Made by a program: the position numbers and the translations under genes
Shown here: positions 1 to 13,592 of the stretch, piece by piece
How the letters are laid out: each line of letters starts with the position of its first letter
Numbering within the stretch: the stretch's first letter is position 1
The notes under the pieces: generated by a model
Seen by the model: the letters and a program-made list of their open reading frames with translations, nothing else
Database searches by the model: none
What the model was told of the DNA's origin: nothing
IMG/VR virus record: IMGVR_UViG_3300023174_002543
Span: 1 to 64,000 of that record
Length of the DNA: 64,000 nt
Strand: one strand, 5' to 3'

Positions 1-167
1 GCGCCTGTAAACGTGCCCGGACTCCCCGTGCCTCCCGGATACGTACCCGAGCCACCGCCGCCGCCTAAGCCTCCACCAGCGCCGCCGCCGCCACCGGACC
101 CACCAACACTACACGCACATGCACCGCATGCTATCAATCTACGTTTTTTTATGTTATCTGAATTCAT
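1..167 (-). CDS. C-terminal half of split gp38-like adhesin no.1, with conserved Cys-rich leader (runs off the window edge)
   Basis: Not in the ORF track. Manual translation from ATG at 167: MNSDNIKKRRLIACGACACSVGGSGGGGGAGGGLGGGGGSGTYPGGTGSPGTFTG... SD-like GGAG in GGAGAATACTAATATG. Paralog of 6145..6561. Confidence 0.85.
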   Translation of the reverse strand, partial: MNSDNIKKRRLIACGACACSVGGSGGGGGAGGGLGGGGGSGTYPGGTGSPGTFTG

Positions 168-171
168 ATTA
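111..171. repeat. Direct repeat copy 1 encoding the KKRRLIACGACAC leader (copy 2 at 6505..6565)
   Basis: 111..152 is identical to 6505..6546 over 42 nt; 58/61 nt match over the full span. Confidence 0.95.
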
Positions 172-882
172 GTATTCTCCACCACCACCGCCACCGCCAC
201 CACCACCGGCGCCAATCAAACCTAGATTGGATATTGATGTGCTATATCCCACATATAATGCAGGTCCACCTCCACCACCCGAAGCTCCGGCGTTGCCTCC
301 TGCAACACCAATTGGTCCATTGCCGCCAGCACCGCCATTACCGCCTCTACCTACTATACAACCTTTATTTATGAGCGTTAAACTTGAACCTGCAGGAAAT
401 GATGGTGATATATAGAACGCATACGAACCGGTACTAGATGATACCACAAATTGACCCACATCAATAGTAACCGTAAATGCTAGAGGTGATGATCCTCCCC
501 AACCCAATGATATAGCAGTAGCCCTCATATCAAAATTATACGTAGTACCTGATATAAGATATGAAAGGGTAGTCAGACACGAAGGGCTATTTGCAATATT
601 ACTATTATAAGATCCAAATCTACCATCCGATAATGTTCGAACTAACGTACTGCCACTACAAACTTGATTTAATAATGTACCATACGGTTCAGGACCGGCT
701 TTATTACGCATGTCATTCATTGAGATAGCACCAGATGGTCTAGCCGCTAGTACTCTAACTAGATAATCATTGAATGATATAGTATTTGTTGGATAATTAG
801 TGGAGCCACTGGCGTTATTAGTCACATTTAGTGCTGTTCTAACGTCACTTGCTCTTATTATTCCGGATGGAGTAGTACTCAT
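169..882 (-). CDS. N-terminal half of Gly-rich gp38-like tail-fibre adhesin no.1
   Basis: LTLINKGCIVGRGGNGG...ISNLGLIGAGGGGGGGG matches the T-even gp38 glycine-rich motif layout. It ends in the poly-Gly run. Paralog of 6576..7277. Confidence 0.75.
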   Translation of the reverse strand: MSTTPSGIIRASDVRTALNVTNNASGSTNYPTNTISFNDYLVRVLAARPSGAISMNDMRNKAGPEPYGTLLNQVCSGSTLVRTLSDGRFGSYNSNIANSPSCLTTLSYLISGTTYNFDMRATAISLGWGGSSPLAFTVTIDVGQFVVSSSTGSYAFYISPSFPAGSSLTLINKGCIVGRGGNGGAGGNGPIGVAGGNAGASGGGGGPALYVGYSTSISNLGLIGAGGGGGGGGGGEY

Positions 883-886
883 CTTA

Positions 887-894
887 TATTTATT
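887..894 (-). promoter_or_regulatory. T4-type late promoter (AATAAATA), 4 nt before the ATG at 882
   Basis: Matches the TATAAATA late consensus; a gp55 homolog is encoded in the window. Confidence 0.55.
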
Positions 895-938
895 AAATAA
901 TAACCTTGACTATTTTGAAGTAGCATGTTAGGGTAGGT

Positions 939-946
939 TATAAATA
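939..946 (+). promoter_or_regulatory. T4-type late promoter (TATAAATA), 5 nt before the ATG at 952
   Basis: Perfect TATAAATA, divergent from the promoter at 887..894. Confidence 0.6.
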
Positions 947-951
947 TAACT

Positions 952-1614
952 ATGAAAGCAGTTATTATTTGGTCAGGTGGCAAAGATAGTGCATATGCAC
1001 TCTATAAGGCGCGGCAACAAGGAATCGATGTAAAGTACGCTATTACCGGTTACTTTAGAGATATGCTGGTTCCGCCTACAGAAGAAACGATTAAAGCACA
1101 GACTGCAGCAGTCGGATTAGAAAGTATAATACTATATTCCGATTTAATTACGTTTCAAATCGCAGTAGAACAAAAACTCAAAGAATTGATTGACAAAGAA
1201 AATATCGATTGTGTAATCCACGGCGAAGGTCATTCTATGTCTAATATAATTTGGTTTAGGGATATGTGCCGAACGTTAAAAGTCAAACCTATATTACCAG
1301 TGTTTACTATCCCTACCATTGATTTGATGAATGAATTATTTGACAATAATTTTAAATTTATAATAACTCGGTTTGTTGTAGCAGGGTTTGACGATCCTAT
1401 AGTAGCTGAATACGCCGGTAAAGATTATACTAGAAAAATTCTAAATGAAGTATTATCATCTTATCCACCAGAAGAACATGGTCTTGCACTTTCATCTAAT
1501 CCATTTGGTCCATCTGGATTGTTACAGACTTTTGTTTATGACGGGCCTATATTTACTAATCCGATATCGGTTAATTTAGAAATTAAACAGTTTGGTAGGG
1601 TAGTGCTACGTTAA
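952..1614 (+). CDS. Diphthine-ammonia ligase (Dph6)-like PP-loop ATP pyrophosphatase
   Basis: N-terminal PP-loop WSGGKDS, central CRTLKVKPILP and C-terminal QTFVYDGPIF motifs typical of the diphthamide synthase/DUF71 family. Confidence 0.75.
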   Translation: MKAVIIWSGGKDSAYALYKARQQGIDVKYAITGYFRDMLVPPTEETIKAQTAAVGLESIILYSDLITFQIAVEQKLKELIDKENIDCVIHGEGHSMSNIIWFRDMCRTLKVKPILPVFTIPTIDLMNELFDNNFKFIITRFVVAGFDDPIVAEYAGKDYTRKILNEVLSSYPPEEHGLALSSNPFGPSGLLQTFVYDGPIFTNPISVNLEIKQFGRVVLR

Positions 1615-2623
1615 AGACTTTGGCAAATTCATTAGTATAATCTACATTCAAATAATTTTTATTTAAATAAACTTCAGGTACACGCAAATCAATATTGATC
1701 GGGTATATGATTCCTTCTTTTTCTAAAACAGTTAGTGTGAAAAAAGTAGATGAAATTCCTAAGCCAACAATTACTTCAGTCAATATAGATTTAAGGTGTT
1801 CAGGACATGATACAAAATTTACAGTATCTTGACTCAAATCTAAACTATGCGTAACACTACCGATTGCAACAATTTTCTTTCCTGCAACAGTTTCTCGTAA
1901 CATAAAGGGACACAATGAATCGGTGTCCTCACTATACAAATATTCGTCCCATGTAAAATTATTTGAATAAGAATTTGTTATTTGTCTTTCATAAGAAATT
2001 GTATTTTCAGTACATGATTGACAATAATCATATAAAGGTGTTAATGTTACTTTTTTATGTTTAGCTATGAAATCTGATGCCTGTTCTTTATTAGAAGGAA
2101 CAACAAATTCTAATTGCCTAATGTTTAAGTTTTTTTCACAAGTATGCGTCAAGTACTGTGCTAATATTGCTTTATTAGTAATAGTTAAGTCACCACCCAA
2201 ATCAGCTATTCTATATCTTGCGTTCTCTGAAAAATACTTAAAAGACTTATAATTAATATAAATGAATCTATCGTAGAGTGATACTGGATTATAAATTAAT
2301 TTTACTCGTTTATCATTGACTAATGGAAGTAGTATATCTACCAAATATGGATATTTAGTAAAATCAGTATCATCTATGTATACCAAAGCGCATCCTGGAT
2401 TTTCATTTGACTTTTTACAAATTTGGTTTTTTTTATATTCTATGATATTACCATTAATCAATCCCAAAACATATTCTTCTAACTTTCCAGATCTGGATAA
2501 GGATTCATACATCTCCTGAGGACAGTCAAATAATATCGGATCTAGATTAAGGTCATAATTGTATATGATTTTGTTTTTTTTAAATGTTATCATCGATGGT
2601 AATGTCATTTGTGGTACTTTCAA
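1583..2623 (-). CDS. ATP-grasp-fold-like protein, degenerate
   Basis: Spacing follows ATP-grasp (NK..L; VVP..EQASDF...KVTLTP; FMLRETVAG; GLG...FFTL...IYPINIDLR), but the canonical KP and E-x-N-x-R residues are substituted. Confidence 0.45.
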   Translation of the reverse strand: MKVPQMTLPSMITFKKNKIIYNYDLNLDPILFDCPQEMYESLSRSGKLEEYVLGLINGNIIEYKKNQICKKSNENPGCALVYIDDTDFTKYPYLVDILLPLVNDKRVKLIYNPVSLYDRFIYINYKSFKYFSENARYRIADLGGDLTITNKAILAQYLTHTCEKNLNIRQLEFVVPSNKEQASDFIAKHKKVTLTPLYDYCQSCTENTISYERQITNSYSNNFTWDEYLYSEDTDSLCPFMLRETVAGKKIVAIGSVTHSLDLSQDTVNFVSCPEHLKSILTEVIVGLGISSTFFTLTVLEKEGIIYPINIDLRVPEVYLNKNYLNVDYTNEFAKVFNVALPYQTV

Positions 2624-3353
2624 TATGAATTAAAGTAGTGTGTATGGAGGAAAATTCAAATATTATATTATTGCCTTTACGGACAGTGGTTCTTCCTAAA
2701 TTATACTTGTCTGTATTTATCGTTTGGTTGGGCGTCAGTATTAATAGATTATCAAACTTAGTTTTGTTACTTAATGAAAACTCTATGGGGTAGTTTACAT
2801 AAGGTTGAATTTCACCAAATGCCGATGGGTTCAATAGTATATCGCAATTTTCATCTAGTACATAATCAACTAGTGTATTATCCATAGTCTCGCTACATAT
2901 CAATGTATTAAATTTTATGTTGTTTAATTCAAACTGTTTAGAAATTACTCCGCCGTATTTAAAGTCTATACAATAAGGATGTGATAGTTTTTTGTGCTGT
3001 TTTTTTTCTTTAATAAGTTGAAAATTATCTTTGTCGATATAGTAGTATGCAGAAACTGTTCCACTATCTGTATGATTGTTATATGCAAATGATCCTATGA
3101 CCATTGTAACACAGTATTGCTTAACTAAGTTATGTAACAATATATGAAATTTTTCCAATGATTGGGTGTTGCATCCTATAACCTCTATAGTTATATCTGA
3201 TGATAACACACAATATCCGGTAAGTGCAAATTCAGGGAATACAACTAATTCTGATCCACTTAGTACAGACCTTATGTAACTTTTTTTTATTTGATTAAAA
3301 TTATACTCAACATTACAAAATTCAATTTGTAAGTGCACCATAGACAATTTCAT
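2580..3353 (-). CDS. Carbon-nitrogen hydrolase (nitrilase superfamily)
   Basis: LVVFPEFALTGY (catalytic Glu), a KKQ region (Lys) and TLICSE (Cys) form a plausible E-K-C triad. Confidence 0.8.
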   Translation of the reverse strand: MKLSMVHLQIEFCNVEYNFNQIKKSYIRSVLSGSELVVFPEFALTGYCVLSSDITIEVIGCNTQSLEKFHILLHNLVKQYCVTMVIGSFAYNNHTDSGTVSAYYYIDKDNFQLIKEKKQHKKLSHPYCIDFKYGGVISKQFELNNIKFNTLICSETMDNTLVDYVLDENCDILLNPSAFGEIQPYVNYPIEFSLSNKTKFDNLLILTPNQTINTDKYNLGRTTVRKGNNIIFEFSSIHTTLIHIESTTNDITIDDNI

Positions 3354-3808
3354 TTTTTATTTGGCCATTCACCTTCCGCAGTGGGCCATATTATATCGTA
3401 GGGGAACCCTGGTTGCTGAGGTACATTACGCAGTTCTTGTCTAAATTTTTTAAATCGTGCAACAGCTTCATCTGAAAAGCCAGCATCAGACATCATTAAC
3501 CAATCACTAGCACGTAATCTTTCATCACGTTCAGCACGAATAGTTCTTGCTTTATCCATTCTTAATTCATCAATAGACCTGGTATCTAATGAACGTATAT
3601 AATCAATATTTTCTATACCTTCAATAATAGCTTTTTTCCTATCTACCGCCCAAACAGGATTAAATCCCTCAATGTATCGAACCAGTGGTTCGCCCTCAAG
3701 ATAACGATTATTTTCAATTGGTAGGTCAATGGCAATAGGATTAGGTAGTGCGTCAAATTTTACAATTAGTTGACCAGTTTCTTCAATAAAATTTAAAATG
3801 CTATACAT
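3350..3808 (-). CDS. Tail fibre assembly chaperone
   Basis: C-terminal IRAERDERLRASDW...FRQELRNVPQQPGFPYDIIWP motif. Confidence 0.85.
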   Translation of the reverse strand: MYSILNFIEETGQLIVKFDALPNPIAIDLPIENNRYLEGEPLVRYIEGFNPVWAVDRKKAIIEGIENIDYIRSLDTRSIDELRMDKARTIRAERDERLRASDWLMMSDAGFSDEAVARFKKFRQELRNVPQQPGFPYDIIWPTAEGEWPNKK

Positions 3809-3815
3809 TAACTTG

Positions 3816-5246
3816 TTATTCCGTAACTAGTGTTGGCATTTCATGTATGCCGTATTCTATTAATTCTACATCTTCATTAAACAAAATCCTAAATGATGCT
3901 TTTTGAATTTCTCCATACCAAATTTTTTCAACTTTACAATTTGTATAAAACGTTTCATCCGGTAACTTTATAGGACAACTGCTTCTACAAAGTAACTTAT
4001 TAGGGCAATTGCCACAGTGTGATTGCTTATCATTTAATGACAATGATAGTATACGAATACCTTTAATATTGTTTAGTGACCCGTATATATGGTCTTTGTC
4101 TGTATGGGGGCAAGTACGTATCATACCATCTACGTCTAATGAAATCACGTCCTGCATGTCAGCACCGCAGTTAGTTTTTTCTAATATAGGTTCACCTTGA
4201 ATCAATTTCCTAGCAAATTCTAATGCAGAATATGCGACTTGTTCTTCCATTAAATCACACAATAATAGCGGAAGTTCTTCAACTGATTTTTCATATATTG
4301 TAGGTGCACCGTCTACAAAACTTTCAATATATTGTTTATAGTGTTGTGACAAGAATTCACGCAATATCATTCTAAATTTATCAAGATTCTCACCATGTAT
4401 TACGTGTGTGAAACTCTCACTCTTTGGACCTTCAGTGGGTACTTCATTATCAATGATGTTACAACCCAAAGCATTTGCTGGATTATATGATGCTGATTCT
4501 TGGTATGTTCTACCCAACGAAAATTGAAGTGAACGAGACTTAAGACCGTTTTCTATAATTTTGTTTCTAAAGAAATCATTTATCTCAAACAAATCAAAAT
4601 TAGTATTTGTTACTGAACAAGAGAAGCCGTATACTATATGAGGTATCTCATCAAACATACGTAATGTTTCAATTACTCGAGGTCTGTTAAAAATTTCATC
4701 ACCACGTAATTGTTGTTGCTTCTCTGCATCATGTGACAAGTTCATGTTAATCATATAACATTTTATTGTTCTAAAAAACTCAGCATGTTTTGGAGACAAT
4801 GCTGAACCATTAGTAGAGATAACAAAGGTTACATTTTCATTTTCAAAGAACTTCATTATCTCTTGCATGTCATTCCAATATAAGAAGGGTTCACCTCCCC
4901 AAAGTTCAACACGTTTTAAATTAGACAAGTCTAAGTTATCTTTGATGTTTTGAAAGAATCGTTCTAAGTTTTCTCGTTTTGGTAATTCATTAGGATTACC
5001 TATATCTTTTTGCATACAATAAGTGCAACTGTAGTTACATGCATGTCCCATTAAGATACGCAATGCAATTGGCTTATTGTGTTTTTTACGTGAGTTATAA
5101 GTATCTACTGCAAACTTACTATATTCGCTCCAATCTTGGTCAGGAGTCAATTGTATACGTGAGCCGTCAAGTTCATGTAATTTGTTATTTACATTATCAT
5201 AGTAGAATTCTATACCTGATGTTGTTTTAAATTTGCTGTATTTCAT
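3816..5246 (-). CDS. Radical SAM protein with C-terminal SPASM domain (peptide/protein maturase-like)
   Basis: CNYSCTYC (CxxxCxxC), WGGEPF, STNG, and SPASM cysteines CGA...RTCPH...CGNCPNKLLCRSSCP...C. Confidence 0.9.
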   Translation of the reverse strand: MKYSKFKTTSGIEFYYDNVNNKLHELDGSRIQLTPDQDWSEYSKFAVDTYNSRKKHNKPIALRILMGHACNYSCTYCMQKDIGNPNELPKRENLERFFQNIKDNLDLSNLKRVELWGGEPFLYWNDMQEIMKFFENENVTFVISTNGSALSPKHAEFFRTIKCYMINMNLSHDAEKQQQLRGDEIFNRPRVIETLRMFDEIPHIVYGFSCSVTNTNFDLFEINDFFRNKIIENGLKSRSLQFSLGRTYQESASYNPANALGCNIIDNEVPTEGPKSESFTHVIHGENLDKFRMILREFLSQHYKQYIESFVDGAPTIYEKSVEELPLLLCDLMEEQVAYSALEFARKLIQGEPILEKTNCGADMQDVISLDVDGMIRTCPHTDKDHIYGSLNNIKGIRILSLSLNDKQSHCGNCPNKLLCRSSCPIKLPDETFYTNCKVEKIWYGEIQKASFRILFNEDVELIEYGIHEMPTLVTE

Positions 5247-6103
5247 TTTTTAAATAATTCTTTCAAGTCGTTCAGGAAAGGTGCATTAAACATAAACATC
5301 CCCTGTATTTGTGTTCTTTTCTCTGGGAGGGTACAAGTAATCTCTGGAAGTTTTGTCCAATGTAAACTAGGCTTTACATGATGTTCTTGATGATAACCAC
5401 TATTAAAGCAGAAAAAATTATAGAGTTTACCATATGATCCTATAGAGTCGCATCTAAAATTACTATGGTCTACTGCATTATAATGCTCTCCGTAACTGTT
5501 TGCGTTATTAGCAACCAATGTTAAAAATATTACCATGATATAAAACAAAGAATACCAAATATTTACAAACATGATAGATAAGAAATATAATACTATCATT
5601 GTATTTTCTATGCGTAGTTTTTTTCTATCAAGGGTTTTAAATTTAGTAGAGCATGTATTTTCTATGTCACGTTCAGAAATACCAGACAAATCTCTATATA
5701 ATCCATACACGATATATGACCAAACATTTTCACGTTTACCATTTTTACCATAACGATAAAAGGATATAGGATCTTTTACTATACCGTTTTTCTGCATGTC
5801 GTTATTGTATCTATGATGCGTTAAATGATAGTACTTCCATAACTGGAATGGAATAGTTGAGGGCATCCCCACAAATATCTCATATATTCTGTTAAAAATT
5901 TTACTATTGAATATGGGCGTGTGGGTATGATGATGCATTGATGTGTTCATCAATACCACGGTGTATATTATTTGAAATGGAGTTAACAACACCCAAAGCC
6001 AAATATTTTCAATGTAGAGTGCAATACCAAATGGTAACAAAAACCCAACCAATGCATATAGCACTAAAAATATATCTAATATCGAATTTCTAAATACTTT
6101 CAT
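5243..6103 (-). CDS. Membrane fatty acid desaturase family (di-iron His-box) protein
   Basis: His boxes HHHTH, HLTHH and HQEHH, plus hydrophobic transmembrane segments. Confidence 0.85.
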   Translation of the reverse strand: MKVFRNSILDIFLVLYALVGFLLPFGIALYIENIWLWVLLTPFQIIYTVVLMNTSMHHHTHTPIFNSKIFNRIYEIFVGMPSTIPFQLWKYYHLTHHRYNNDMQKNGIVKDPISFYRYGKNGKRENVWSYIVYGLYRDLSGISERDIENTCSTKFKTLDRKKLRIENTMIVLYFLSIMFVNIWYSLFYIMVIFLTLVANNANSYGEHYNAVDHSNFRCDSIGSYGKLYNFFCFNSGYHQEHHVKPSLHWTKLPEITCTLPEKRTQIQGMFMFNAPFLNDLKELFKK

Positions 6104-6108
6104 TAAAG

Positions 6109-6116
6109 TATTTATC
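6109..6116 (-). promoter_or_regulatory. Late promoter (GATAAATA), 5 nt before the desaturase ATG; heads the tailoring-enzyme operon
   Basis: GATAAATA-CTTTA-ATG with no SD. Confidence 0.55.
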
Positions 6117-6144
6117 CTTATAGTACTATCCTCATTTAAATAAA

Positions 6145-6561
6145 TTAACTCACTGCTCCGTGCCTAGTCCCGGTTACTATCCAGTTTACATTACTGTTAC
6201 CTACAATTGCAGCACCGGCCGCACCACCTGCACCACCATAGCCAGTACCATTACCAGTGCTGTTGCCGCCCGCTGCACCAGACGTGCCTAAGAAACCGCC
6301 GGTGCCACCGGTACCTCCTGTATACCCCGCTACACCACCGGTAATACCGGCACCGCCGGCGCCGCCTCCTGTTGCTGTGCCGTTCGCTCCGGTGCCGCCA
6401 GTTGGTCGGGTACTGCCATTTATGGTAACGGTTACGAGACTCGCACCTCCGGTCGCGCCAAGCCCATTGCCGGCACCTCCTCCCCCTCCTCCTCCGCCCC
6501 AATAACACGCACATGCACCGCATGCTATCAATCTACGTTTTTTTATAATATCTGTATTCAT
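6145..6561 (-). CDS. C-terminal half of split gp38-like adhesin no.2, with conserved Cys-rich leader
   Basis: Starts MNTDIIKKRRLIACGACAC, then poly-Gly; ends GAAIVGNSNVNWIVTGTRHGAVS like gp38-type adhesin C-termini. SD AAGGA upstream. Confidence 0.85.
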   Translation of the reverse strand: MNTDIIKKRRLIACGACACYWGGGGGGGGAGNGLGATGGASLVTVTINGSTRPTGGTGANGTATGGGAGGAGITGGVAGYTGGTGGTGGFLGTSGAAGGNSTGNGTGYGGAGGAAGAAIVGNSNVNWIVTGTRHGAVS

Positions 6562-6565
6562 ATTA
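6505..6565. repeat. Direct repeat copy 2 (leader-encoding)
   Basis: 42-nt exact match to 111..152. Confidence 0.95.
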
Positions 6566-6575
6566 ATATTGTTCC

Positions 6576-7277
6576 TTAGGCGGATGCGCCGCCACCGCCC
6601 CCGCCTCCTCCGCCACCAATAGTACCATTATTAGTTATTGATGTGCTATATCCCACATATAATGCAGGGCCACCGGCGGTGCCGGCACTGCCGGTTATTC
6701 TGGCGGCGCCACCGGCACCAATGCCGCCATCACCACCTTTACCAATTATATAACCATTATTTATGAGTGTTAAACTTGAACCTGCAGGAAATGTAGGAGA
6801 TATATAGACTGCATAAGATCCCGTACTAATTGAGGTAACGTATATGCCGGTTGCAATAGTAAGAGTTGCGTTTACTGCTTGTGTACCATTCCATCCAGCA
6901 TCTACTATAGCTTTTCTTAAGTCAAAATTATTGGTATTTGCTGGAATAGTATAATTATAAGTAAATCCGCAACTGGGGCTGTTTGCTATATCATTTATTG
7001 TAGAACCGTATTTCCCGTCTGCTATTGATTGCCTTAAGGTACTACCGACACAAATGCTACTTAAAACTGTTCCGGATGCTGTGGGGCCGGCTTTGTTACG
7101 CATATCACTCATTGAAATGGTAGATTTATCAGTGGGTTTTCCAGCCAATATTCTAACCAATGAATCATTAAATGTTAGTACAGCCGTGGCGCTTGGGTAA
7201 TTAGTAGATAATCCCTCGTTTAAGGTAGTCTCTACATTCTTAACACTTATAGCATTGGGTGCGGCTGGGGTAGGCAT
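6576..7277 (-). CDS. N-terminal half of Gly-rich gp38-like tail-fibre adhesin no.2
   Basis: LTLINNGYIIGKGGDGG...NNGTIGGGGGGGGG. Shares DNA blocks with 169..882 (e.g. 232..264 = 6636..6668). Confidence 0.75.
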   Translation of the reverse strand: MPTPAAPNAISVKNVETTLNEGLSTNYPSATAVLTFNDSLVRILAGKPTDKSTISMSDMRNKAGPTASGTVLSSICVGSTLRQSIADGKYGSTINDIANSPSCGFTYNYTIPANTNNFDLRKAIVDAGWNGTQAVNATLTIATGIYVTSISTGSYAVYISPTFPAGSSLTLINNGYIIGKGGDGGIGAGGAARITGSAGTAGGPALYVGYSTSITNNGTIGGGGGGGGGGASA

Positions 7278-7278
7278 G

Positions 7279-7830
7279 TTATTTAATATACTCTATAAAT
7301 TCTTCTTTTGTCAAAAATTTTTTCACTATATGTGATTTACATTCAATAATAAACTTATCAATGTATTCTAACAATTTTTCTATAGCACTATCTTTGGTAA
7401 TGAAGACTTCAAATTTTTCAGTTTTATAGTTAAAAATTTCATAATGATGCATTGGATTATTCATTGGTAATTTGTTGTATTCATCTGCACTCTCCAGTAA
7501 ATTGAAATAAGAGTTAGTGTATAATATTTCTTTATTATTATCAGTGTTGAATCGTATTACTGCAATTATGAATTTATGTTTGTTCTGTTGTAGTATTTCT
7601 TCGCGGTTTTCATAGTATAAATGGTCAATGATTATTGACATATTTTTATCTGCTGGTTTAGACGAACCTTGTGTTGGTTCAGTTGGCATATAAATTATAT
7701 TTGCAAATATATCATCATCAATATAATATGTAGAATCTAAAACATTATATGTTGAATCTGTAGGTAACTGATTGATATCATTTACAACAATATCGTATGT
7801 CTTTGATAAATGTTTCACCAAATATATCAT
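7279..7830 (-). CDS. Hypothetical protein, paralog of 8906..9196; possible fibre-associated accessory protein
   Basis: N-terminus MIYLVKH...IVVNDINQLP resembles MIYLLTD...IIVKDMRYLP. Each lies directly upstream of a Gly-rich gene. Confidence 0.6.
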   Translation of the reverse strand: MIYLVKHLSKTYDIVVNDINQLPTDSTYNVLDSTYYIDDDIFANIIYMPTEPTQGSSKPADKNMSIIIDHLYYENREEILQQNKHKFIIAVIRFNTDNNKEILYTNSYFNLLESADEYNKLPMNNPMHHYEIFNYKTEKFEVFITKDSAIEKLLEYIDKFIIECKSHIVKKFLTKEEFIEYIK

Positions 7831-8904
7831 TTAATACCCCCACCATATGAAAACGATGCCACCGGTGCCAGCTGCACCAGTTAGAATGTTATTTGAACCC
7901 CTATATACGTCAGATTGATTACATCCTCCACCACTTCCGCCGGCGCCAAAACCAGTTCCCGCAGTGGGAGTTACTCCTGAATTTTGCGTACATGACGGAC
8001 CATTACCATAGGCACCATAATTAACATTCCAATTATAAAAACCGTTACCAAGAGGAGATGCGTAATTAGGTCCGGCTACTATTCCATAGGCGCCGGCGCC
8101 TCCACCAGTAGTACCTGTTGGTGGAGGTTGGCCTTGGCCAGGTGTCATAAAACTACTACCTATACTTGCATAACCTGCACTAGCGTATGAATTAGTAGCC
8201 GGGGCGCGGCCGCCCCCCCATCCACCAGTAGCTTGACATTTTTGGTTTGGACCAACCCAAACAGTAGTAGTTCCGCCGCCGGCTCCCCCACTACCCCCGC
8301 CGTATTGCCCGTCACAAGGGCCTCCACCAGCACCACCGGTGCCTATCTGCCAACTAATACCTTGTCCTCTAGTAATAGGTACATTATATGCTACTGAAAT
8401 AGCACCTCCACCTCCACCTCCACCTCCAGTAAAGTAACCACTCCAACTAGTACGCCCAGACCCACCACCTCCGCCACCACCTCCGCCACATGCTATTATG
8501 TTTATAGATGTACCGGCCCAATCAGGAAGTGTATAGCTACCAGTTGCAGTAAAAACTAGATTACCGGGGACAGTTGCAACATATCCACACGTAGTACTAT
8601 TAGGTGTAGATGAGCCTACATATGTACCATAGTTACCATTACTATTTACAATGTTTAACGTGTATCCACTAGTACAATACTGAGATGAATAAGTTCCATA
8701 TGGATCAGGACCTGGTTTATTTCTAAGACTATCCATTGACATATAACTACTACCGGGGCTGGGCGTACCGCATGCAATTCCACTAGTAGCCACTTGTAAT
8801 CTCCTAACCATACTGTCATTCAAACTAATACGTGAATTATAGCCGTAATTTAAGGCAGTATTAAGATTTGCCATGCTTATTGGTTTATTTGGTGTATAAC
8901 TCAT
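7831..8904 (-). CDS. Gly-rich tail fibre/adhesin-like protein no.3 (unsplit)
   Basis: Shares the N-terminal SMxxxRNKxGP motif and Cys-pair module with the other two. Glycine-rich domain ends GTGGIVFIWW. Confidence 0.7.
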   Translation of the reverse strand: MSYTPNKPISMANLNTALNYGYNSRISLNDSMVRRLQVATSGIACGTPSPGSSYMSMDSLRNKPGPDPYGTYSSQYCTSGYTLNIVNSNGNYGTYVGSSTPNSTTCGYVATVPGNLVFTATGSYTLPDWAGTSINIIACGGGGGGGGGSGRTSWSGYFTGGGGGGGGAISVAYNVPITRGQGISWQIGTGGAGGGPCDGQYGGGSGGAGGGTTTVWVGPNQKCQATGGWGGGRAPATNSYASAGYASIGSSFMTPGQGQPPPTGTTGGGAGAYGIVAGPNYASPLGNGFYNWNVNYGAYGNGPSCTQNSGVTPTAGTGFGAGGSGGGCNQSDVYRGSNNILTGAAGTGGIVFIWWGY

Positions 8905-8905
8905 A

Positions 8906-9196
8906 TTAATTATTCATTATGTATATAAGATATGCAGAGAAAAAATCCAAACTATCAAATTTTTTAACCATAGAGTTTTTAAAAAAATGTTGCACAATGA
9001 TGCGAACTTCATCATCAGTGCCCGATACATCGTTAGGTATCGTTACTATGTCTGCAAAAGTACTATCATTTACCATAAAAAAATGCTTACCGTTTTCATG
9101 AGATATATTATACTGGTCATCAAAAGGAAGGTATCTCATGTCCTTGACAATGATTGTTTTATTTTTTGTAGTAGCGTCAGTTAATAGATATATCAT
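8906..9196 (-). CDS. Hypothetical protein, paralog of 7279..7830
   Basis: The ORF track starts at TTG 9214; ATG at 9196 aligns with the paralog start. Confidence 0.6.
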   Translation of the reverse strand: MIYLLTDATTKNKTIIVKDMRYLPFDDQYNISHENGKHFFMVNDSTFADIVTIPNDVSGTDDEVRIIVQHFFKNSMVKKFDSLDFFSAYLIYIMNN

Positions 9197-9229
9197 AAAC
9201 CCCAATAGGACCAAAATAGTTCCTATTAG

Positions 9230-9237
9230 TATTTATC
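9230..9237 (-). promoter_or_regulatory. Late promoter (GATAAATA)
   Basis: Intergenic match to the late consensus, upstream of the adhesin gene run. Confidence 0.5.
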
Positions 9238-9241
9238 GGCT

Positions 9242-11182
9242 TTACTTACTGTGATAATATTGGGTTAACCATTCCCAATCATAACTTAACATGAGTTTTT
9301 CCATGTTCCCGTCAACATGTTGATAGTAATTGACTGCATCTCTTGCACCCATTTTACTGTATTCTCCAAAATTCCCATTACCTTTGTTTAACCAAGCAGA
9401 ACCCCTATCAATTGATTCTTGGTCAGTATTAGCACATAACTTAATCATTTCTCTGAATGCAGTTCTCCAAGTATCATATTCGCTAGAATTATATGTACTG
9501 ATACCGGAATTAATATCTACAATTTCAGTTGGGCTATCCATAGTAAAGTCTAAGCCGTTGACCTCTGTATTCAATGTAAGTTTACGATTATTCACTACTA
9601 TTGCTTGATGTCCGTATTCTAAACTATTAACAGGGTTGGTACAAGTAAAGATATAGTGACGGCTACTTTTCATTCTGTTTGGTTGCCAATTAAAGTCAAA
9701 GTCATCTCTTACTCTTAACTTAGCATTAACTAGAAAGTACCACGGCGTTGTTGATATGTTTGCCGCGGCATGTTGGCTTTTAACACGACCATTTACTCTA
9801 TCAACTCTGTGTACTTTATTAGGTAAATTTTTTGTAATCTCTAATAAATGATTATAATTATCTTCCGCACAACTTTCACCGTTGCTAAAAAATACAATAT
9901 CTAATGGTTCTATTTTAGTCGGATATCGATGATGAAATACATATGAATAGTCTGAAAGTTTGTCATATAACTTATACACAACATCGCTAGGTACTACTGC
10001 TTCATACTCATTGAGTATATGTAAATATGGATTGTGTTCCATGTTTGGTAATATCTTTTGGTAATCTATTGTCGGCTTGTCTACATAAAAATGAACATAC
10101 TTACTTGAATATAAATGTTTTACCACTGCATCAAATATACTATCCTCAACCCGCACTTTAGGTATATCTAATTTAGCAACTACATCAGTCATGTACTTTG
10201 TACCCACGCTATCACGTTGTCTATAAATGACGGTTGGCATATTTTCAGGAGGAAAGTATTCATTACCAAATACATATGTATATGGTTCTTCTGTTTCATC
10301 CGGGTGCCAACTATAGTCAAAATCAACTACTGATTCTATAACTCTAAACTTCTTAGACATAGGAATACGAATACTGGACTGTGCGTCACAATACTTCTTA
10401 ATTGTTGCATTACGCATACTGTATATTGGTCCACCTGTCTTTTGCCATTGTGTACCAAACTCATACATGTAGGGTGGTTCAGTATCATCAGGATGCCAAC
10501 TAAAGTCAAAACTATCCATGTCAATACTTTCAGGTATTGACCAGCGTCTTAAATTAGGTAATCGTATAGCAATCTGAGTATCATTGTATTTTACAATCTC
10601 AGCATTATCAGGTGTGTATCTTGGTCCACCTGTCTTTTGCCATTGCGTTCCAAACTGATGTATCAAATTAGGTTCATGTGGACTGGGTCTCCAGCTATAG
10701 TCAAATGAATCTTCACTTAGACCCTCAGGTATATACCATTTTTCTATCTCAGGCAATAATGTTGCTTTGATGTTATCTATATACTTTTTATCAATGGCAC
10801 CTTTAACTCTATACTGAACGGTAGGCATTGTTGTACTATCATACCATTGATTACCAAATACGTATATGAATGGTGGTTCAGTGTCATCTGGATGCCAGCT
10901 ATAATCAAAGTTGATGTTACTAACTAAATTTCTATAGCATCTACTATTACTATCAGGTAGTTTCTTTGCTATTTGATGATTTTGATATTTGATACCTTCA
11001 CTTTCAGGTATAACAAATCTTGGACCACCTGTCTTTTGATGTTGTGTACCAAACTGATGTGTATATGGTCTATCGTATGGTTCGGGTCTCCAATCAAAAT
11101 CAAAATTGGTAGTATCTAAAAAATCAGGGACTTCCCAATACCCCTGTTTAAATAATTCTAATCTACGTTCAATATCTATCAT
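9242..11182 (-). CDS. Repeat protein (five FDxSWxP repeats) fused to a glycosyltransferase-like C-terminal domain
   Basis: Repeats FD[YF][SD]W[HR]P...FG[TN][QE]. C-terminal LDIVFFSNGE...HAAANISTTPWYFLVNA...WRTAFRE is homologous to 15010..15963. Confidence 0.65.
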   Translation of the reverse strand: MIDIERRLELFKQGYWEVPDFLDTTNFDFDWRPEPYDRPYTHQFGTQHQKTGGPRFVIPESEGIKYQNHQIAKKLPDSNSRCYRNLVSNINFDYSWHPDDTEPPFIYVFGNQWYDSTTMPTVQYRVKGAIDKKYIDNIKATLLPEIEKWYIPEGLSEDSFDYSWRPSPHEPNLIHQFGTQWQKTGGPRYTPDNAEIVKYNDTQIAIRLPNLRRWSIPESIDMDSFDFSWHPDDTEPPYMYEFGTQWQKTGGPIYSMRNATIKKYCDAQSSIRIPMSKKFRVIESVVDFDYSWHPDETEEPYTYVFGNEYFPPENMPTVIYRQRDSVGTKYMTDVVAKLDIPKVRVEDSIFDAVVKHLYSSKYVHFYVDKPTIDYQKILPNMEHNPYLHILNEYEAVVPSDVVYKLYDKLSDYSYVFHHRYPTKIEPLDIVFFSNGESCAEDNYNHLLEITKNLPNKVHRVDRVNGRVKSQHAAANISTTPWYFLVNAKLRVRDDFDFNWQPNRMKSSRHYIFTCTNPVNSLEYGHQAIVVNNRKLTLNTEVNGLDFTMDSPTEIVDINSGISTYNSSEYDTWRTAFREMIKLCANTDQESIDRGSAWLNKGNGNFGEYSKMGARDAVNYYQHVDGNMEKLMLSYDWEWLTQYYHSK

Positions 11183-12657
11183 GTATACACTTTGATACCA
11201 TACAGTTTTTCAAAACGTCTAGCATCACCCTTGTCATTGACCATTGGTTCACCTCGTATGTTTAAACTTGTATTAAGTAACATAGGGCATTCAGTCATCA
11301 CATACCATTTTTCAAGGAGCTCTCTAATTCCGCTTCCATCATCAGGGACAGTTTGTACACGACTAGTCCCGTCAACATGAACGATAGCAGGAAATAAGTC
11401 AGGATACCTACACTTAGCAACTGACTGCATATACCTGCTGTTATCGAAACCGCTAGGCATACTAAAGTACTTATTAGCATACTCCTCCAAAATAACTGGA
11501 GCAAAGGGTCTGAACTTTTGTCTACGTTTGATTTCATTTACTCTATCCTTAATTTCATTGCCTCTAGGGTCTGCCAATAAACTTCTATTACCCAATGCTC
11601 TCGGACCAAATTCTGCACGACCACTAGCAATACCAATAATTTCTCCGCGTAATAGTGCATCAAGTGCTTTATTAGTAGGATACTTACCCTCTATATTATA
11701 ACCAAGAAAGGCATTATTCCAGTTAACTCTATAGTTAAATCCAAGTGCGGCTGCGCCTAAACTACTACCTGCATCGCCCGGATTAGGCATAATCCATATA
11801 TGTTCAAAGTGTTTACCTAAATGTTGATTAGCAACACAATTCAATGCTACACCGCCGCCATATACTAGATTTCTACTATGTCCAAGAATTCTTGCACGTT
11901 GCATTACATTATAGATTAGTTGTTCAGCCAAAACTTGACTACTTGCAGCAATATCCATTTTGTCAGCATCTTGCATGTACGTTTCAGATACACCTAGATG
12001 TAAATTATCATTGAATTCTAAATCAACACTATAACTCAACATGTCTTGATGCATTTGGGCATAGTATTTAGGATCCCCGTATGCGCTCATACCCATTAAG
12101 ATATATTCTTCTTCGTTGGGTTTTAATCCTACACGCTTAGTCATTGCGCTATAAAACAATCCAATACTATTAGGATATTTTTGACTCCATAGTTTTTTAT
12201 ACTTAGGACCTTTAGATGTATATCGTGCATCCCAAATACTGATAGTATCAAATTCTCCTATTGCATCAATCACTACTATCGTTGCATCAACAAAACCACT
12301 AGTTTGAAATCCGGCTGCCGCATGTGTTAAATGATGGCTATGAGTATGAATCTTTTTATTGTAAAGCATATTATGAATATCTTTACCTATAATATTCTTA
12401 GCAAATAATGTGTTGAATCTTGGATTCTGTCCTGCTCGGAGTTGTCGTAGATATTTTAACGTTGGGTTTTCGTAGTAGTGAAGTTCATAATCACCCTTTA
12501 CATATGATAGTGCGTCTTCTACCAATCTTGGATGTAGATTTTTATCATTTTTAATTTTACTATATCGTTCTGAATGCCCGGCAAAAAGTATTTTGCCGCC
12601 GGCAATAACACTTATACTAGCATCGTGAAACCCAGCACTAATTCCTATGTAATACAT
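11179..12657 (-). CDS. Carbamoyltransferase (NodU/CmcH/TobZ family)
   Basis: GISAGFHDAS, HHLTHAA, GGVALNC, EFGPRALGNRSLLADP, RPFAP and LLNTSLN motifs. Confidence 0.95.
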   Translation of the reverse strand: MYYIGISAGFHDASISVIAGGKILFAGHSERYSKIKNDKNLHPRLVEDALSYVKGDYELHYYENPTLKYLRQLRAGQNPRFNTLFAKNIIGKDIHNMLYNKKIHTHSHHLTHAAAGFQTSGFVDATIVVIDAIGEFDTISIWDARYTSKGPKYKKLWSQKYPNSIGLFYSAMTKRVGLKPNEEEYILMGMSAYGDPKYYAQMHQDMLSYSVDLEFNDNLHLGVSETYMQDADKMDIAASSQVLAEQLIYNVMQRARILGHSRNLVYGGGVALNCVANQHLGKHFEHIWIMPNPGDAGSSLGAAALGFNYRVNWNNAFLGYNIEGKYPTNKALDALLRGEIIGIASGRAEFGPRALGNRSLLADPRGNEIKDRVNEIKRRQKFRPFAPVILEEYANKYFSMPSGFDNSRYMQSVAKCRYPDLFPAIVHVDGTSRVQTVPDDGSGIRELLEKWYVMTECPMLLNTSLNIRGEPMVNDKGDARRFEKLYGIKVYT

Positions 12658-12772: not shown

Positions 12773-13592
12773 TAGGTATTACCTCAAAAAATTTAGTTAC
12801 TATTGAATCTTGATGCAGAAACCCCGGATGTGAGGTGTCAACATTTTTAATACTACTAATATCTCTTGCTCTATTAAAATGTAGACATTGAACGTTTTCA
12901 AATATTCCTTGTGACATTGGTAAATCACTTATAATGTCAGGATATTTATTACCAAATGTATCATTAACAACATCCTGATAAGTACTCATTTCAAACAACG
13001 GTATATTAGACAACTTACAAATTACTTGTATTGTTGTTCGTATAATATCAAATCTGTTAAAAACTTGATGATCCATTACGATAAAATCTTGATATGACCT
13101 TTTCCAATGACCATCATCAATCAAGTTTGGTAGCATAAATTGAGTATGTATTTCGTCAATCCAATAAAACGTGCGATACACACTAGGCCAATTTATAATT
13201 ACTGCTTTTGGTTTATTTGGCGCTTTGTTCATTAGATTTACAAAATTGTAATATACAAAATCAACACTACTACCGCCCATACTTGCATTAACGTAATCAA
13301 CACCGGCTTGTTCTGCTATTTTATATACATACGTATCTTCTAGTCTTAACCCAAATCCAGCAGTAAAACTACACCCAAAAAAAGCATAGTAGTTATTGTA
13401 ATCAACATCTTCTAATTGTTTCATCCTATAACCTAATCTGTTAAATTTATAGGTAATAGGATTCTTAGCGTAGTACCAATCACTACCATATTTCTTTAGA
13501 TTAAGTTTAAATGCTTCCTCTGAATCTGTGTGTGCAAAAGGGACTTCAACATCAATCAAATTTTCATGTGATGACCTGATTAAAAAATTCAT
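12765..13592 (-). CDS. SGNH/GDSL hydrolase-like protein
   Basis: FFGCSFTAG (block I), NASMGGSS (block II) and a C-terminal D..HP motif. Confidence 0.6.
   Translation of the reverse strand: MNFLIRSSHENLIDVEVPFAHTDSEEAFKLNLKKYGSDWYYAKNPITYKFNRLGYRMKQLEDVDYNNYYAFFGCSFTAGFGLRLEDTYVYKIAEQAGVDYVNASMGGSSVDFVYYNFVNLMNKAPNKPKAVIINWPSVYRTFYWIDEIHTQFMLPNLIDDGHWKRSYQDFIVMDHQVFNRFDIIRTTIQVICKLSNIPLFEMSTYQDVVNDTFGNKYPDIISDLPMSQGIFENVQCLHFNRARDISSIKNVDTSHPGFLHQDSIVTKFFEVIPND

What the first reader, a model, noticed from the sequence alone, without database searches (positions are those of the whole stretch)
1..7277. Split gp38-like adhesins whose C-terminal halves carry a conserved RiPP-like leader (MNxDxIKKRRLIACGACAC), bracketing a radical SAM/SPASM tailoring cluster
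Seen in sequence: two paralogous Gly-rich genes (169..882, 6576..7277) stop at the same poly-Gly run. Each is followed, in a different frame (gaps of 1 and 14 nt) and with its own SD, by an ORF that resumes the poly-Gly pattern; the complete copy (6145..6561) also supplies the gp38-type C-terminus. Both second ORFs begin with the same 19-aa extension (17/19 identical) ending C-G-A-C-A-C and diverge immediately after it. Between the cassettes lie a radical SAM/SPASM enzyme, desaturase, C-N hydrolase, ATP-grasp-like protein, Dph6-like ATPase and fibre chaperone. Established: T-even gp38 is a single chain whose glycine-rich motifs are joined by hypervariable receptor-binding loops, and SPASM radical SAM enzymes often modify leader-bearing Cys-containing peptides (sacti-/ranthipeptides) or convert Cys to formylglycine (anSMEs). 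Inference: the adhesin is opened at a tip loop so that a leader-directed, enzymatically modified Cys motif is displayed or used to rejoin the halves. This would be RiPP-type chemistry applied to a virion receptor-binding protein.
Basis: partly seen in the sequence, partly recalled or inferred. Interest (0 to 1): 0.92.

Follow-up and report, generated by a model that had tools for sequence, protein, structure and literature searches.

The report
Split phage adhesin, radical-SAM-targeted cysteines
In a 367-kb environmental jumbo phage, two tail-fibre-tip adhesins are each encoded as two separate genes. The second gene starts with a cysteine motif that, across many phages, always sits beside one family of radical-SAM enzymes, which points to an undescribed enzymatic modification of the protein a virus uses to recognise its host.

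Summary
Two gp38-type adhesin genes (169..882 and 6576..7277, minus strand) stop just after the first poly-Gly motif. Each is followed by a separate ORF that begins MN(S/T)D(N/I)IKKRRLIACGACAC and then resumes poly-Gly.

- **Split.** It is neither an assembly error nor a frameshift. At least 14 independent contigs carry it, with gaps of 1-40 nt, all three frame offsets, or whole genes between the halves.
- **Leader.** It is translated: orthologous copies differ only by synonymous changes.
- **Position.** Profile comparisons place the break in hypervariable segment 1 of gp38.
- **Linkage.** Every split gp38 found beside a homologue of the 3816..5246 radical SAM/SPASM enzyme has the Cys motif. 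Nineteen unsplit relatives have neither the motif nor the enzyme.
- **Wider pattern.** The enzyme family's constant partner is an alternating-Cys (C-x)n motif at a free chain end of tail-fibre-associated proteins. This holds in viral contigs, in Ralstonia phage RP12, in Achromobacter phage JWF and in Rhodobacteraceae, Bradyrhizobium and Ewingella genomes.

The chemistry (thioether is my best guess), the fate of the leader and the role of the other enzymes remain untested. I found no description of this in the literature searched.

The parts
169..882 (-). Cassette A, N-terminal fragment of a gp38-type adhesin (237 aa); ends in poly-Gly plus EY
   Evidence: Pfam GP38, 30 bits; alignments; the N-half family equals columns 1-177 of the unsplit family, E 2e-50
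1..167 (-). Cassette A, start of the C-terminal fragment (ATG at 165..167); cut by the contig end. The 19-codon leader is 111..167
   Evidence: the complete orthologue is P0001 / L008:10049-10456
952..1614 (+). Dph6-like PP-loop ATPase (accessory; present in 4 of 18 related loci)
   Evidence: Pfam Diphthami_syn_2, 7e-22; NCBIfam Dph6_archaeal, 68.5 bits, below its cut-off; distribution
1583..2623 (-). 346-aa protein of unknown fold; its first ~50 residues resemble the N-terminal module of the fibre chaperone
   Evidence: no family hits; hhalign against the chaperone family gives probability 66%, E 6e-5; model unusable
2580..3353 (-). Carbon-nitrogen hydrolase; best NCBIfam hit is the glutaminase part of NAD+ synthase. 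The window's copy matched no ORF in the other loci by phmmer
3350..3808 (-). Tail-fibre assembly chaperone (Phage_tail_APC); core member of the module
   Evidence: Pfam, 1.7e-20; PHROG tail fiber assembly; present in 16 of 18 related loci
3816..5246 (-). Radical SAM/SPASM enzyme with CX3CX2C at C70/C74/C77 and seven invariant SPASM Cys (C360...C437); core member of the module
   Evidence: model pLDDT 83.7; nearest folds are CteB, TigE and SkfB
5243..6103 (-). Membrane fatty-acid-desaturase-type di-iron enzyme; overlaps the rSAM start by 4 nt (accessory; in 7 of 18 loci)
   Evidence: Pfam, 2e-27; it lies between the two adhesin halves in L012 and L076
6145..6561 (-). Cassette B, complete C-terminal fragment (138 aa): leader 6505..6561, then poly-Gly motifs and the gp38-type C-terminus
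   Evidence: the C-half family equals columns 216-300 of the unsplit family, E 1e-17
6576..7277 (-). Cassette B, N-terminal fragment of a gp38-type adhesin (233 aa); ends in poly-Gly plus ASA
   Evidence: Pfam GP38, 26.1 bits
7831..8904 (-). Unsplit glycine-rich paralogue (357 aa) with the same N-terminal domain; no Cys leader
   Evidence: (Gly_rich_2, below its cut-off)

Best explanation
Each cassette encodes a two-piece gp38-type adhesin. The chain is broken in hypervariable segment 1, between glycine-rich motifs 1 and 2. The N-fragment supplies the fibre-attachment and beta-helix part plus motif 1. The C-fragment supplies motifs 2-5 and the C-terminal strand, so the two must co-fold, helped by the adjacent tail-fibre chaperone.

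The break turns the loop into a free N-terminal peptide, M-x(5-12)-(K/R)RL(I/V)(A/G)-CGAC(AC). This peptide is the substrate of the neighbouring radical SAM/SPASM enzyme. The enzyme belongs to a phage-borne family whose constant partner is an alternating-Cys motif at a free end of a fibre-associated protein.

The most likely chemistry (inferred, not shown) is radical formation of thioether cross-links from the Cys thiols to neighbouring carbons, as CteB, PapB and SkfB do. That would give a rigid, reduction-proof element at the receptor-binding tip.

Shown here: the split, translation of the leader, the position of the break and the three-way genomic linkage. Inferred: substrate identity, chemistry and co-folding.
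For: Split is real and old:
- At least 14 independent loci carry it, with gaps of 1-40 nt, all three frame offsets and their own SD-like sites. In L010/L011 the rSAM gene, and in L012 the desaturase plus rSAM genes (L076 likewise, cut by its contig end), lie between the halves.

Leader is a peptide, not an RNA element:
- Window copy A against its L008 orthologue shows 6 synonymous and 0 non-synonymous codon changes.
- Over 14 copies, the 9-residue core is written with 2-7 different codons per position.
- There is no Rfam hit and no significant RNA fold.

Position of the break:
- The N-half profile equals unsplit profile columns 1-177 (E 2e-50) and the C-half profile equals columns 216-300 (E 1e-17).
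- The unsplit profile hits solved gp38 structures 9v85 and 6f45.
- gp38 hypervariable segments form the tip loops (PMC12032242).

Linkage:
- All loci whose rSAM is 56-62% identical, plus L034, L036, L044 and L056, show a split gp38 with a Cys start and the chaperone wherever the contig extends far enough to show them.
- Nineteen gp38 relatives found from the N-half side are unsplit and have no rSAM.
- An exhaustive HMM search with the C-half profile found 12 of about 13 short C-half clusters starting with the Cys motif. About 135 unsplit hits match only after it.

Wider rule:
- A terminal (C-x)n ORF occurs in 57 of 79 viral and 21 of 35 bacterial-genome rSAM loci, against 0 of 45 loci with generic SPASM enzymes.
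- It is also present in phage RP12 (an unannotated ORF) and in JWF gp028, just before a Hint domain.
- In the tree, the split-gp38 enzymes form one clade nested among the C-terminal-motif enzymes.

Enzyme:
- It has CX3CX2C plus 7 invariant SPASM Cys. Seven ligands for two auxiliary clusters leave one open site, which by my recollection of CteB is where the substrate Cys binds.
- The nearest structures are CteB, TigE and SkfB.
- A paralogous rSAM in the three-rSAM clusters best matches the PapB ranthipeptide maturase.
Against: - There are no biochemical data, so the product is unknown.
- The enzyme scores far below every curated NCBIfam cut-off (PapB 49.9 bits against 340; anSME 34.6 against 349). 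TM-scores to CteB are only about 0.5.
- Its N-terminal extension is about 60 residues (three strands and one helix), shorter than a canonical RiPP recognition element.
- A split lineage starting MSACDCC has no rSAM on a 24-kb contig.
- L027 has the rSAM and the chaperone but no Cys-motif ORF in view.
- Co-folding of the halves could not be modelled, because the tools take single chains only.
- The rSAM-side sample was collected through the enzyme, so the linkage is partly ascertained. The N-half-side and C-half-side searches mitigate this.
Confidence: 0.6

Rival explanations
1. The Cys motif is a structural metal-binding or disulfide clasp at the broken loop and is not enzymatically modified. 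The radical SAM enzyme acts on something else, such as the glycine-rich region, the chaperone or a small molecule.
For: - CxxC and CxC are classic metal and redox motifs.
- Some unsplit gp38 relatives without the enzyme carry Cys in their variable loops (L097, L104, L105).
- The MSACDCC lineage has no rSAM on its contig.
- Fibre-associated partners in the other groups carry HxH motifs next to the Cys run.
Against: - The (C-x)n run is the only feature shared by the partners of this enzyme family across gp38 fragments, 65-90-aa proteins, about 220-aa Rhodobacteraceae proteins and the JWF fibre. Poly-Gly is absent from most of them.
- Generic SPASM loci show 0 of 45.
Confidence: 0.15
2. The enzyme, alone or with the ATP-grasp-like or PP-loop enzymes, covalently joins the two fragments, for example a Cys of the C-fragment to the tail of the N-fragment, and so restores one chain with a non-peptide bridge.
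For: - The two new ends must lie next to each other in the fold.
- A weak ATP-grasp (YheCD) family is present in 11 of 18 loci, and in L015 it lies in one tightly packed gene row with the rSAM.
Against: - The N-fragment tails have no conserved residue and vary from 0 to 6 residues.
- To my knowledge no intermolecular cross-linking by a SPASM enzyme is known.
- In the other groups the motif sits on a small protein with no split partner.
Confidence: 0.1
3. The split is a neutral scar of a gene cassette (rSAM with or without desaturase) that inserted into gp38 at the recombination-prone poly-Gly run. The fragments merely complement each other, and the enzyme is an unrelated passenger.
For: - The rSAM lies between the halves in L010, L011, L012 and L076.
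- gp38 glycine motifs are reported recombination hot spots (PMC12032242).
- The cassettes share blocks of 100% nucleotide identity.
Against: - It does not explain the conserved Cys peptide under purifying selection.
- It does not explain the same enzyme family sitting beside (C-x)n ends in unrelated proteins.
- Gene order is shuffled while membership is kept.
Confidence: 0.08
4. The stops are assembly or sequencing errors in homopolymer-like poly-Gly DNA, or are bypassed by programmed frameshifting or hopping, so one chain is made.
For: - GC-rich repetitive runs are error-prone.
- An A7 run lies inside the leader of both window copies.
Against: - Independent assemblies from JGI, ENA and Logan share the split, with different gaps and all three frame offsets.
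- The A-run is broken by a synonymous change in L008.
- There is no significant RNA structure.
- Whole genes separate the halves in four loci.
Confidence: 0.02

Closest known systems
T-even-type gp38 tail-fibre adhesin (Salmonella phage S16, PDB 6F45; E. coli phage PP01, PDB 9V85; Pfam PF05268)
   Same: N-terminal attachment and beta-helix part, alternating glycine-rich motifs and variable segments, and a conserved C-terminal strand. Pfam and PDB profile hits.
   Different: Encoded as two genes broken in variable segment 1. The new N-terminus carries a conserved Cys peptide. It is linked to a radical SAM enzyme, sits in a 367-kb jumbo phage, and differs at its N-terminus.
Thioether-forming radical SAM/SPASM peptide maturases (CteB for SCIFF, PapB for ranthipeptides, SkfB and AlbA for sactipeptides)
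   Same: CX3CX2C plus the seven-Cys SPASM motif. They are the nearest solved structures by sequence and by fold. The gene sits next to a Cys-bearing substrate candidate.
   Different: Scores lie far below the family cut-offs and the N-terminal domain is short. The substrate is a 120-150-residue fragment of a virion protein with the motif at its N-terminus, not a small secreted peptide. No protease or exporter is present.
QhpD/QhpC (quinohemoprotein amine dehydrogenase maturation)
   Same: From my own knowledge: a SPASM enzyme that installs Cys thioethers in a protein subunit that then assembles with partner subunits. NCBIfam quino_hemo_SAM is among the weak hits of the paralogous rSAM.
   Different: It matures a bacterial redox enzyme, its acceptors are Asp/Glu, and it has no relation to virions.
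Anaerobic sulfatase-maturating enzyme (anSME)
   Same: A SPASM enzyme acting on a Cys of a folded-protein substrate. The JWF homologue was annotated this way in GenBank.
   Different: TIGR03942 scores 34.6 bits against a cut-off of 349. The window motif lacks the C-x-(P/A)-x-R consensus. By my recollection anSME has fully ligated auxiliary clusters.
His-Xaa-Ser (HXS) system: rSAM-matured repeat protein
   Same: A radical SAM/SPASM enzyme paired with a protein whose only conserved feature is a two- or three-residue repeat (title and abstract of PMC13128918). HxsB is among the weak hits.
   Different: HXS is a bacterial anti-phage system with HxS repeats. Here a phage encodes the enzyme and the repeat is C-x on its own fibre proteins.

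Membership tests
gp38 adhesin (PF05268) | Sequence match to the family model above its curated threshold | tested here: met
   N-halves score 30.0 and 26.1 bits against a cut-off of 25. The unsplit relatives' profile hits 9v85_A (5e-5) and 6f45_D (4e-3).
gp38 adhesin (PF05268) | Glycine-rich motifs alternating with variable segments, followed by a conserved C-terminus | tested here: met
   Alignments; hhalign.
gp38 adhesin (PF05268) | A single polypeptide chain | tested here: not met
   Two ORFs with stop codons, separate starts and different frames, conserved in at least 14 loci.
gp38 adhesin (PF05268) | [quoted passage not shown] | not testable with these tools
   Needs virion structure or adsorption assays.
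Radical SAM / SPASM subfamily | CX3CX2C cluster motif and the C-terminal motif CX9-15GX4C...CX2CX5CX3C...C | tested here: met
   C70/C74/C77 and C360, C379, C411, C414, C420, C424, C437 are invariant in 28 homologues. Pfam Radical_SAM and Fer4_12 hit.
Sacti-/ranthipeptide maturases (CteB, PapB, SkfB) | Match to a curated equivalog model | tested here: not met
   PapB 49.9 bits against 340; SCIFF maturase 33.7 against 425.
Sacti-/ranthipeptide maturases (CteB, PapB, SkfB) | Overall fold with an N-terminal peptide-recognition domain | tested here: inconclusive
   Foldseek top hits are 5wgg, 8vpo and 6efn with probability 1.0 but TM about 0.5. The N-terminal extension is only about 60 residues.
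Sacti-/ranthipeptide maturases (CteB, PapB, SkfB) | Cys-containing substrate encoded nearby | tested here: met
Sacti-/ranthipeptide maturases (CteB, PapB, SkfB) | Thioether product | not testable with these tools
   Needs mass spectrometry or NMR.
RiPP pathway in the strict sense | A leader that is recognised and then removed, releasing a small product (protease or exporter in the cluster) | tested here: not met
   The conserved module (rSAM, chaperone, two adhesin fragments) holds no protease or transporter for the peptide. Distant members have no leader (L056 and P0165). The motif is followed by a 120-residue structural domain.
Anaerobic sulfatase maturase | Equivalog model and the substrate motif C/S-x-P/A-x-R | tested here: not met
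   34.6 bits against 349. The window motif is CGACAC followed by YW or SV.
Bacterial lipoprotein signal (lipobox) | A hydrophobic h-region before L-x-(A/G)-C | tested here: not met
   L-I-A-C fits the box, but it is preceded directly by KKRR with no hydrophobic stretch. Distant members lack the L.

The most novel reading that the evidence does not exclude
Many unrelated tailed phages and prophages use a dedicated radical SAM/SPASM enzyme to convert a run of alternating cysteines, placed at a free chain end of their fibre tip, into a non-proteinogenic cross-linked or metal-chelating element that takes part in receptor recognition. These include jumbo phages, Ralstonia phage RP12, Achromobacter phage JWF, and Rhodobacteraceae and Bradyrhizobium elements. 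On this reading the gp38 gene here was split specifically to give the enzyme access to the loop. A bolder form follows from the phage-borne TonB-dependent receptor and Tct transporter genes next to the module: the modified tip mimics a metallophore.
Probability: 0.15. Interest if true: 0.92.

Novelty: new variant of a known kind. Interest (0 to 1): 0.82.

Why it matters
Receptor-binding proteins of phages are treated as plain polypeptides whose specificity is read from sequence. If a virion adhesin is matured by radical chemistry on a dedicated Cys motif, two things follow. Host-range prediction from sequence and adhesin engineering would miss a chemical layer. RiPP-type enzymology would also gain a new substrate class, namely structural proteins of viruses.

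The genetic signature found here is simple enough to test at once: one enzyme family plus a terminal (C-x)n run. It also occurs in cultivated systems (Ralstonia phage RP12, Achromobacter phage JWF, Rhodobacteraceae and Bradyrhizobium strains). It further offers a natural example of a beta-helix/polyglycine domain that assembles from two chains.

Tried and rejected
- **Frameshift, hopping or RNA element at the junction.** Rejected: frame offsets differ, the A-run is not conserved, there is no Rfam hit and the fold z-scores are -0.9 and +1.5.
- **Assembly artefact.** Rejected.
- **Lipoprotein or Tat signal.** Rejected by inspection: there is no h-region.
- **Megablast of 1..9300 against isolated phages.** No match.
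- **Back-translated full leader against IMG/VR.** Found only the window's own contig.
- **The search for related loci with the C-half alignment.** Failed because the chosen patterns were poly-Gly.
- **Word-based protein search with the C-half.** Gave only 3 hits for the same reason.
- **Search for the missing end of cassette A at the other contig end.** No match.
- **ATP-grasp identity of the 346-aa protein.** No family or PDB hits; hhalign against the weak ATP-grasp family gave probability 0.8%; the AlphaFold model has pLDDT 40 and was not used for a fold search.
- **Literature.** Eight full-text searches found no paper linking a radical SAM enzyme to a phage fibre or adhesin. A cyanophage paper merely lists such a gene as 'antibiotic synthesis'.

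Full report
**What is in the window**

The window begins at base 1 of a 367,104-bp IMG/VR contig. The contig is AT-rich (about 35% GC). It carries a 5,727-codon ORF and other large minus-strand genes and has no close relative among isolated phages.

On the minus strand of the first 9 kb, reading from high to low coordinates, lie:
- an unsplit glycine-rich fibre protein (7831..8904);
- an adhesin N-fragment (6576..7277) and its C-fragment (6145..6561);
- a desaturase (5243..6103);
- a radical SAM/SPASM enzyme (3816..5246);
- a tail-fibre chaperone (3350..3808);
- a CN hydrolase (2580..3353);
- a 346-aa protein (1583..2623);
- a convergent Dph6-like ATPase on the plus strand (952..1614);
- a second N-fragment (169..882), and the start of its C-fragment from 167 down to the contig end.

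From the desaturase to the 346-aa gene, starts and stops overlap or lie 7 nt apart, which suggests one transcription unit.

Both N-fragments hit Pfam GP38 above threshold and end in the same poly-Gly run. The second ORFs start 1 nt and 14 nt after the stops, in different frames, behind GGAG or AAGGA. They share 17 of 19 residues. The motif pattern occurs twice in the window against zero expected by chance.

**The split is genuine and the leader is a peptide**

A related ENA contig (L008) has the same two cassettes plus an unsplit paralogue.
- Between the window and L008, the cassette-A leader differs by six synonymous and no non-synonymous codon changes.
- One of those changes breaks the A7 run that could have suggested slippage.
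- Over 14 copies from 12 contigs, the core (K/R)RL(I/V)(A/G)CGAC is written with 2-7 different codons per position.
- Junctions in 17 cassettes have gaps of 1-40 nt in all three frame relations. In L010 and L011 the rSAM gene separates the halves, and in L012 the desaturase and rSAM genes do. L076 starts the same way but ends inside the rSAM gene.
- No Rfam family and no unusual RNA fold is present.

Frameshifting, hopping and assembly error are therefore excluded.

**Where the chain is broken**

Profile-profile comparison maps the N-fragment family onto columns 1-177 of unsplit relatives (E 2e-50). It maps the C-fragment family onto columns 216-300, up to the last residue (E 1e-17). The unsplit profile in turn hits the solved gp38 adhesins of PP01 and S16.

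In that alignment the break falls between glycine-rich motifs 1 and 2, which is hypervariable segment 1. Published work describes these segments as the loops at the receptor-binding tip. It also describes the beta-helix domain as built from both the N- and the C-terminus (PMC12032242). Each fragment therefore contributes to both domains, and the two must co-fold. That last step is inference.

**Linkage to the enzyme**

The enzyme has more than 300 metagenomic homologues. Eighty viral loci were fetched with a family alignment.
- In every locus whose enzyme is 56-62% identical and whose contig extends far enough, and in L034, L036, L044 (about 43%) and L056 (34%), there is a split gp38 and a chaperone. 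The C-fragment starts with a Cys motif just before poly-Gly.
- Clustering gives a core module: enzyme 18 of 18, chaperone 16, N-fragment 15. The accessory genes are a weak ATP-grasp family (11), desaturase (7), a TctC-like protein (7), TctA (5) and a Dph6-like protein with a 267-343-aa partner (3-4).

Two searches that did not start from the enzyme agree with this.
- Nineteen gp38 relatives recovered through the N-fragment are all unsplit and have no such enzyme in their flanks.
- An exhaustive HMM search with the C-fragment profile returned about 135 unsplit proteins that match only from profile position ~20, which lies after the Cys motif. It also returned about 13 short C-fragment clusters, 12 of which begin with a Cys motif.

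One exception is a lineage starting MSACDCC, whose 24-kb contig has no radical SAM gene.

**A wider rule**

Looking at all loci with a homologue, the constant neighbour is not gp38 but a run of alternating cysteines at a chain end.
- In the multi-rSAM loci, proteins of 63-93 aa end in a run like C-E-C-Q-C-A-C-A-C followed by GRG and one or two more residues.
- In Bradyrhizobium and related viral contigs, proteins of about 77 aa end in ...CACDCNCACGK.
- In Rhodobacteraceae, proteins of about 220 aa end in ...NCNCNCRC, beside collagen/Peptidase_S74 fibres.
- In L078 and L086, one protein carries about 30 C-K/C-Q repeats.
- Isolated Ralstonia jumbo phage RP12 has the three-rSAM cluster and an unannotated ORF of this kind.
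- In Achromobacter phage JWF, the fibre gp028 carries the Cys run immediately before the first Cys of a Hint autoprocessing domain, next to the rSAM gene. Cleavage there would leave the run at a new C-terminus.

With a strict definition, a terminal motif ORF is present in 57 of 79 viral and 21 of 35 genomic loci. The controls give 0 of 45 loci of generic SPASM enzymes, 0 in the other 55 kb of the window, and 3 spurious hits in 20 unsplit-gp38 loci. Many misses are contig-end truncations.

A tree of 98 enzymes puts those associated with split gp38 in one clade (SH-aLRT 93). That clade is nested among enzymes associated with C-terminal motifs. Use on a split adhesin is therefore a derived state.

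**The enzyme**

- It has CX3CX2C and exactly seven invariant Cys in the SPASM pattern.
- The model is confident (pLDDT 83.7).
- The nearest solved structures, by sequence and by fold, are CteB (thioether), TigE (cyclopropylglycine) and SkfB (thioether), at modest TM-scores.
- No curated family claims it, and PHROGs lists it only as a radical SAM protein.
- Seven ligands for two auxiliary clusters imply one open iron site. From my recollection of the CteB work, that is where a substrate cysteine binds.

This, together with Cys being the only conserved substrate feature, is the basis for favouring thioether formation. It remains inference, and formylglycine or another outcome is not excluded.

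**How it most likely works**

1. Late in infection the N-fragment, C-fragment, chaperone and enzyme are made together.
2. The enzyme binds the free N-terminal peptide of the C-fragment and modifies its cysteines.
3. The fragments co-fold on the fibre tip.

A chain end seems to be what the enzyme family needs, and splitting the gene provides one inside a loop.

The KRLIA stretch may be a recognition element. It is absent from distant members, so it is not a general leader, and nothing indicates that it is removed.

The CN hydrolase plus Dph6-like pair resembles the two halves of a glutamine-dependent amidating enzyme: the CN hydrolase best matches the glutaminase part of NAD+ synthase. The pair could amidate a carboxylate, perhaps the new C-terminus. 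That is speculation.

**Verdict**

The finding is real, statistically robust and, as far as eight literature searches show, undescribed. Its details (RiPP leader, rejoining, the role of the other enzymes) are not established.

Noticed in passing
window 13592..15016 (-), 11179..12657 (-): Just upstream of the adhesin cassettes lie a second, unrelated radical SAM enzyme (NCBIfam N_Twi_rSAM, 349 bits, above its cut-off) and a carbamoyltransferase (Carbam_trans_N/C). No Cys-run ORF was found near them.
   Followed up: partly
window 21233..38416 (-): A single ORF of 5,727 codons, followed by ORFs of 1,123, 1,073 and 875 codons. These are giant virion-type genes of a jumbo phage and were not analysed.
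   Followed up: no
L111:3972-4193 (Ralstonia phage RP12, NC_041911.1, about 82864-83085): An unannotated ORF between ORF074 and ORF075 ends in an HxH motif followed by a C-N-C-N-C-A-C run. It lies just upstream of three radical SAM genes flanked by virion structural genes.
   Followed up: partly
L112:4802-6253 (Achromobacter phage JWF gp028): A tail-fibre protein in which an 11-residue alternating-Cys run ends exactly at the first Cys of a Hint (intein-like) domain (Pfam Hom_end_hint from residue 308). The next gene but one is the rSAM homologue.
   Followed up: partly
L003:11401-14890; L027:6100-9582; L010:13813-14625; L017:5941-7236: Several phage contigs carry a TonB-dependent receptor and TctA/TctB/TctC-like transporter genes directly beside the adhesin/rSAM module. 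That is an odd cargo for a tail-fibre region.
   Followed up: no
window 1583..2623 (-) and 3350..3808 (-); L008:6956-7987, L008:10456-11550: The 346-aa protein and its relatives share their first ~50 residues with the N-terminal module of the tail-fibre chaperone (hhalign probability 66%, E 6e-5). This hints that they dock on the same partner.
   Followed up: partly
window 111..167 versus 6505..6561, and blocks within 169..882 versus 6576..7277: The two cassettes share stretches of 100% nucleotide identity (the leader at 55 of 57 nt, plus two blocks of 33-40 nt) amid about 60-70% identity elsewhere. This suggests gene conversion or recombination between the paralogues.
   Followed up: partly
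L078:3817-4524, L086:3828-4550: Proteins of 235-240 aa contain about 30 consecutive C-K / C-Q / C-A dipeptide repeats and lie about 5 kb from a distant homologue of the enzyme.
   Followed up: no
L015:2221-7466: One tightly packed gene row, with five overlapping junctions and one 6-nt gap: N-fragment, C-fragment, chaperone, a 147-aa protein that looks cupin-like by eye (no Pfam hit for its relative), rSAM, a weak ATP-grasp-like protein and the desaturase. This argues that these accessory enzymes belong to one pathway in that lineage.
   Followed up: partly
L097:3305-4129; PDB 9v85 alignment: Some unsplit gp38 proteins carry Cys in variable segment 1 (L097 has C-R-C-N-S-C), and PP01 gp38 has a Cys immediately before glycine motif 2. 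A Cys at this spot may therefore predate the split.
   Followed up: no
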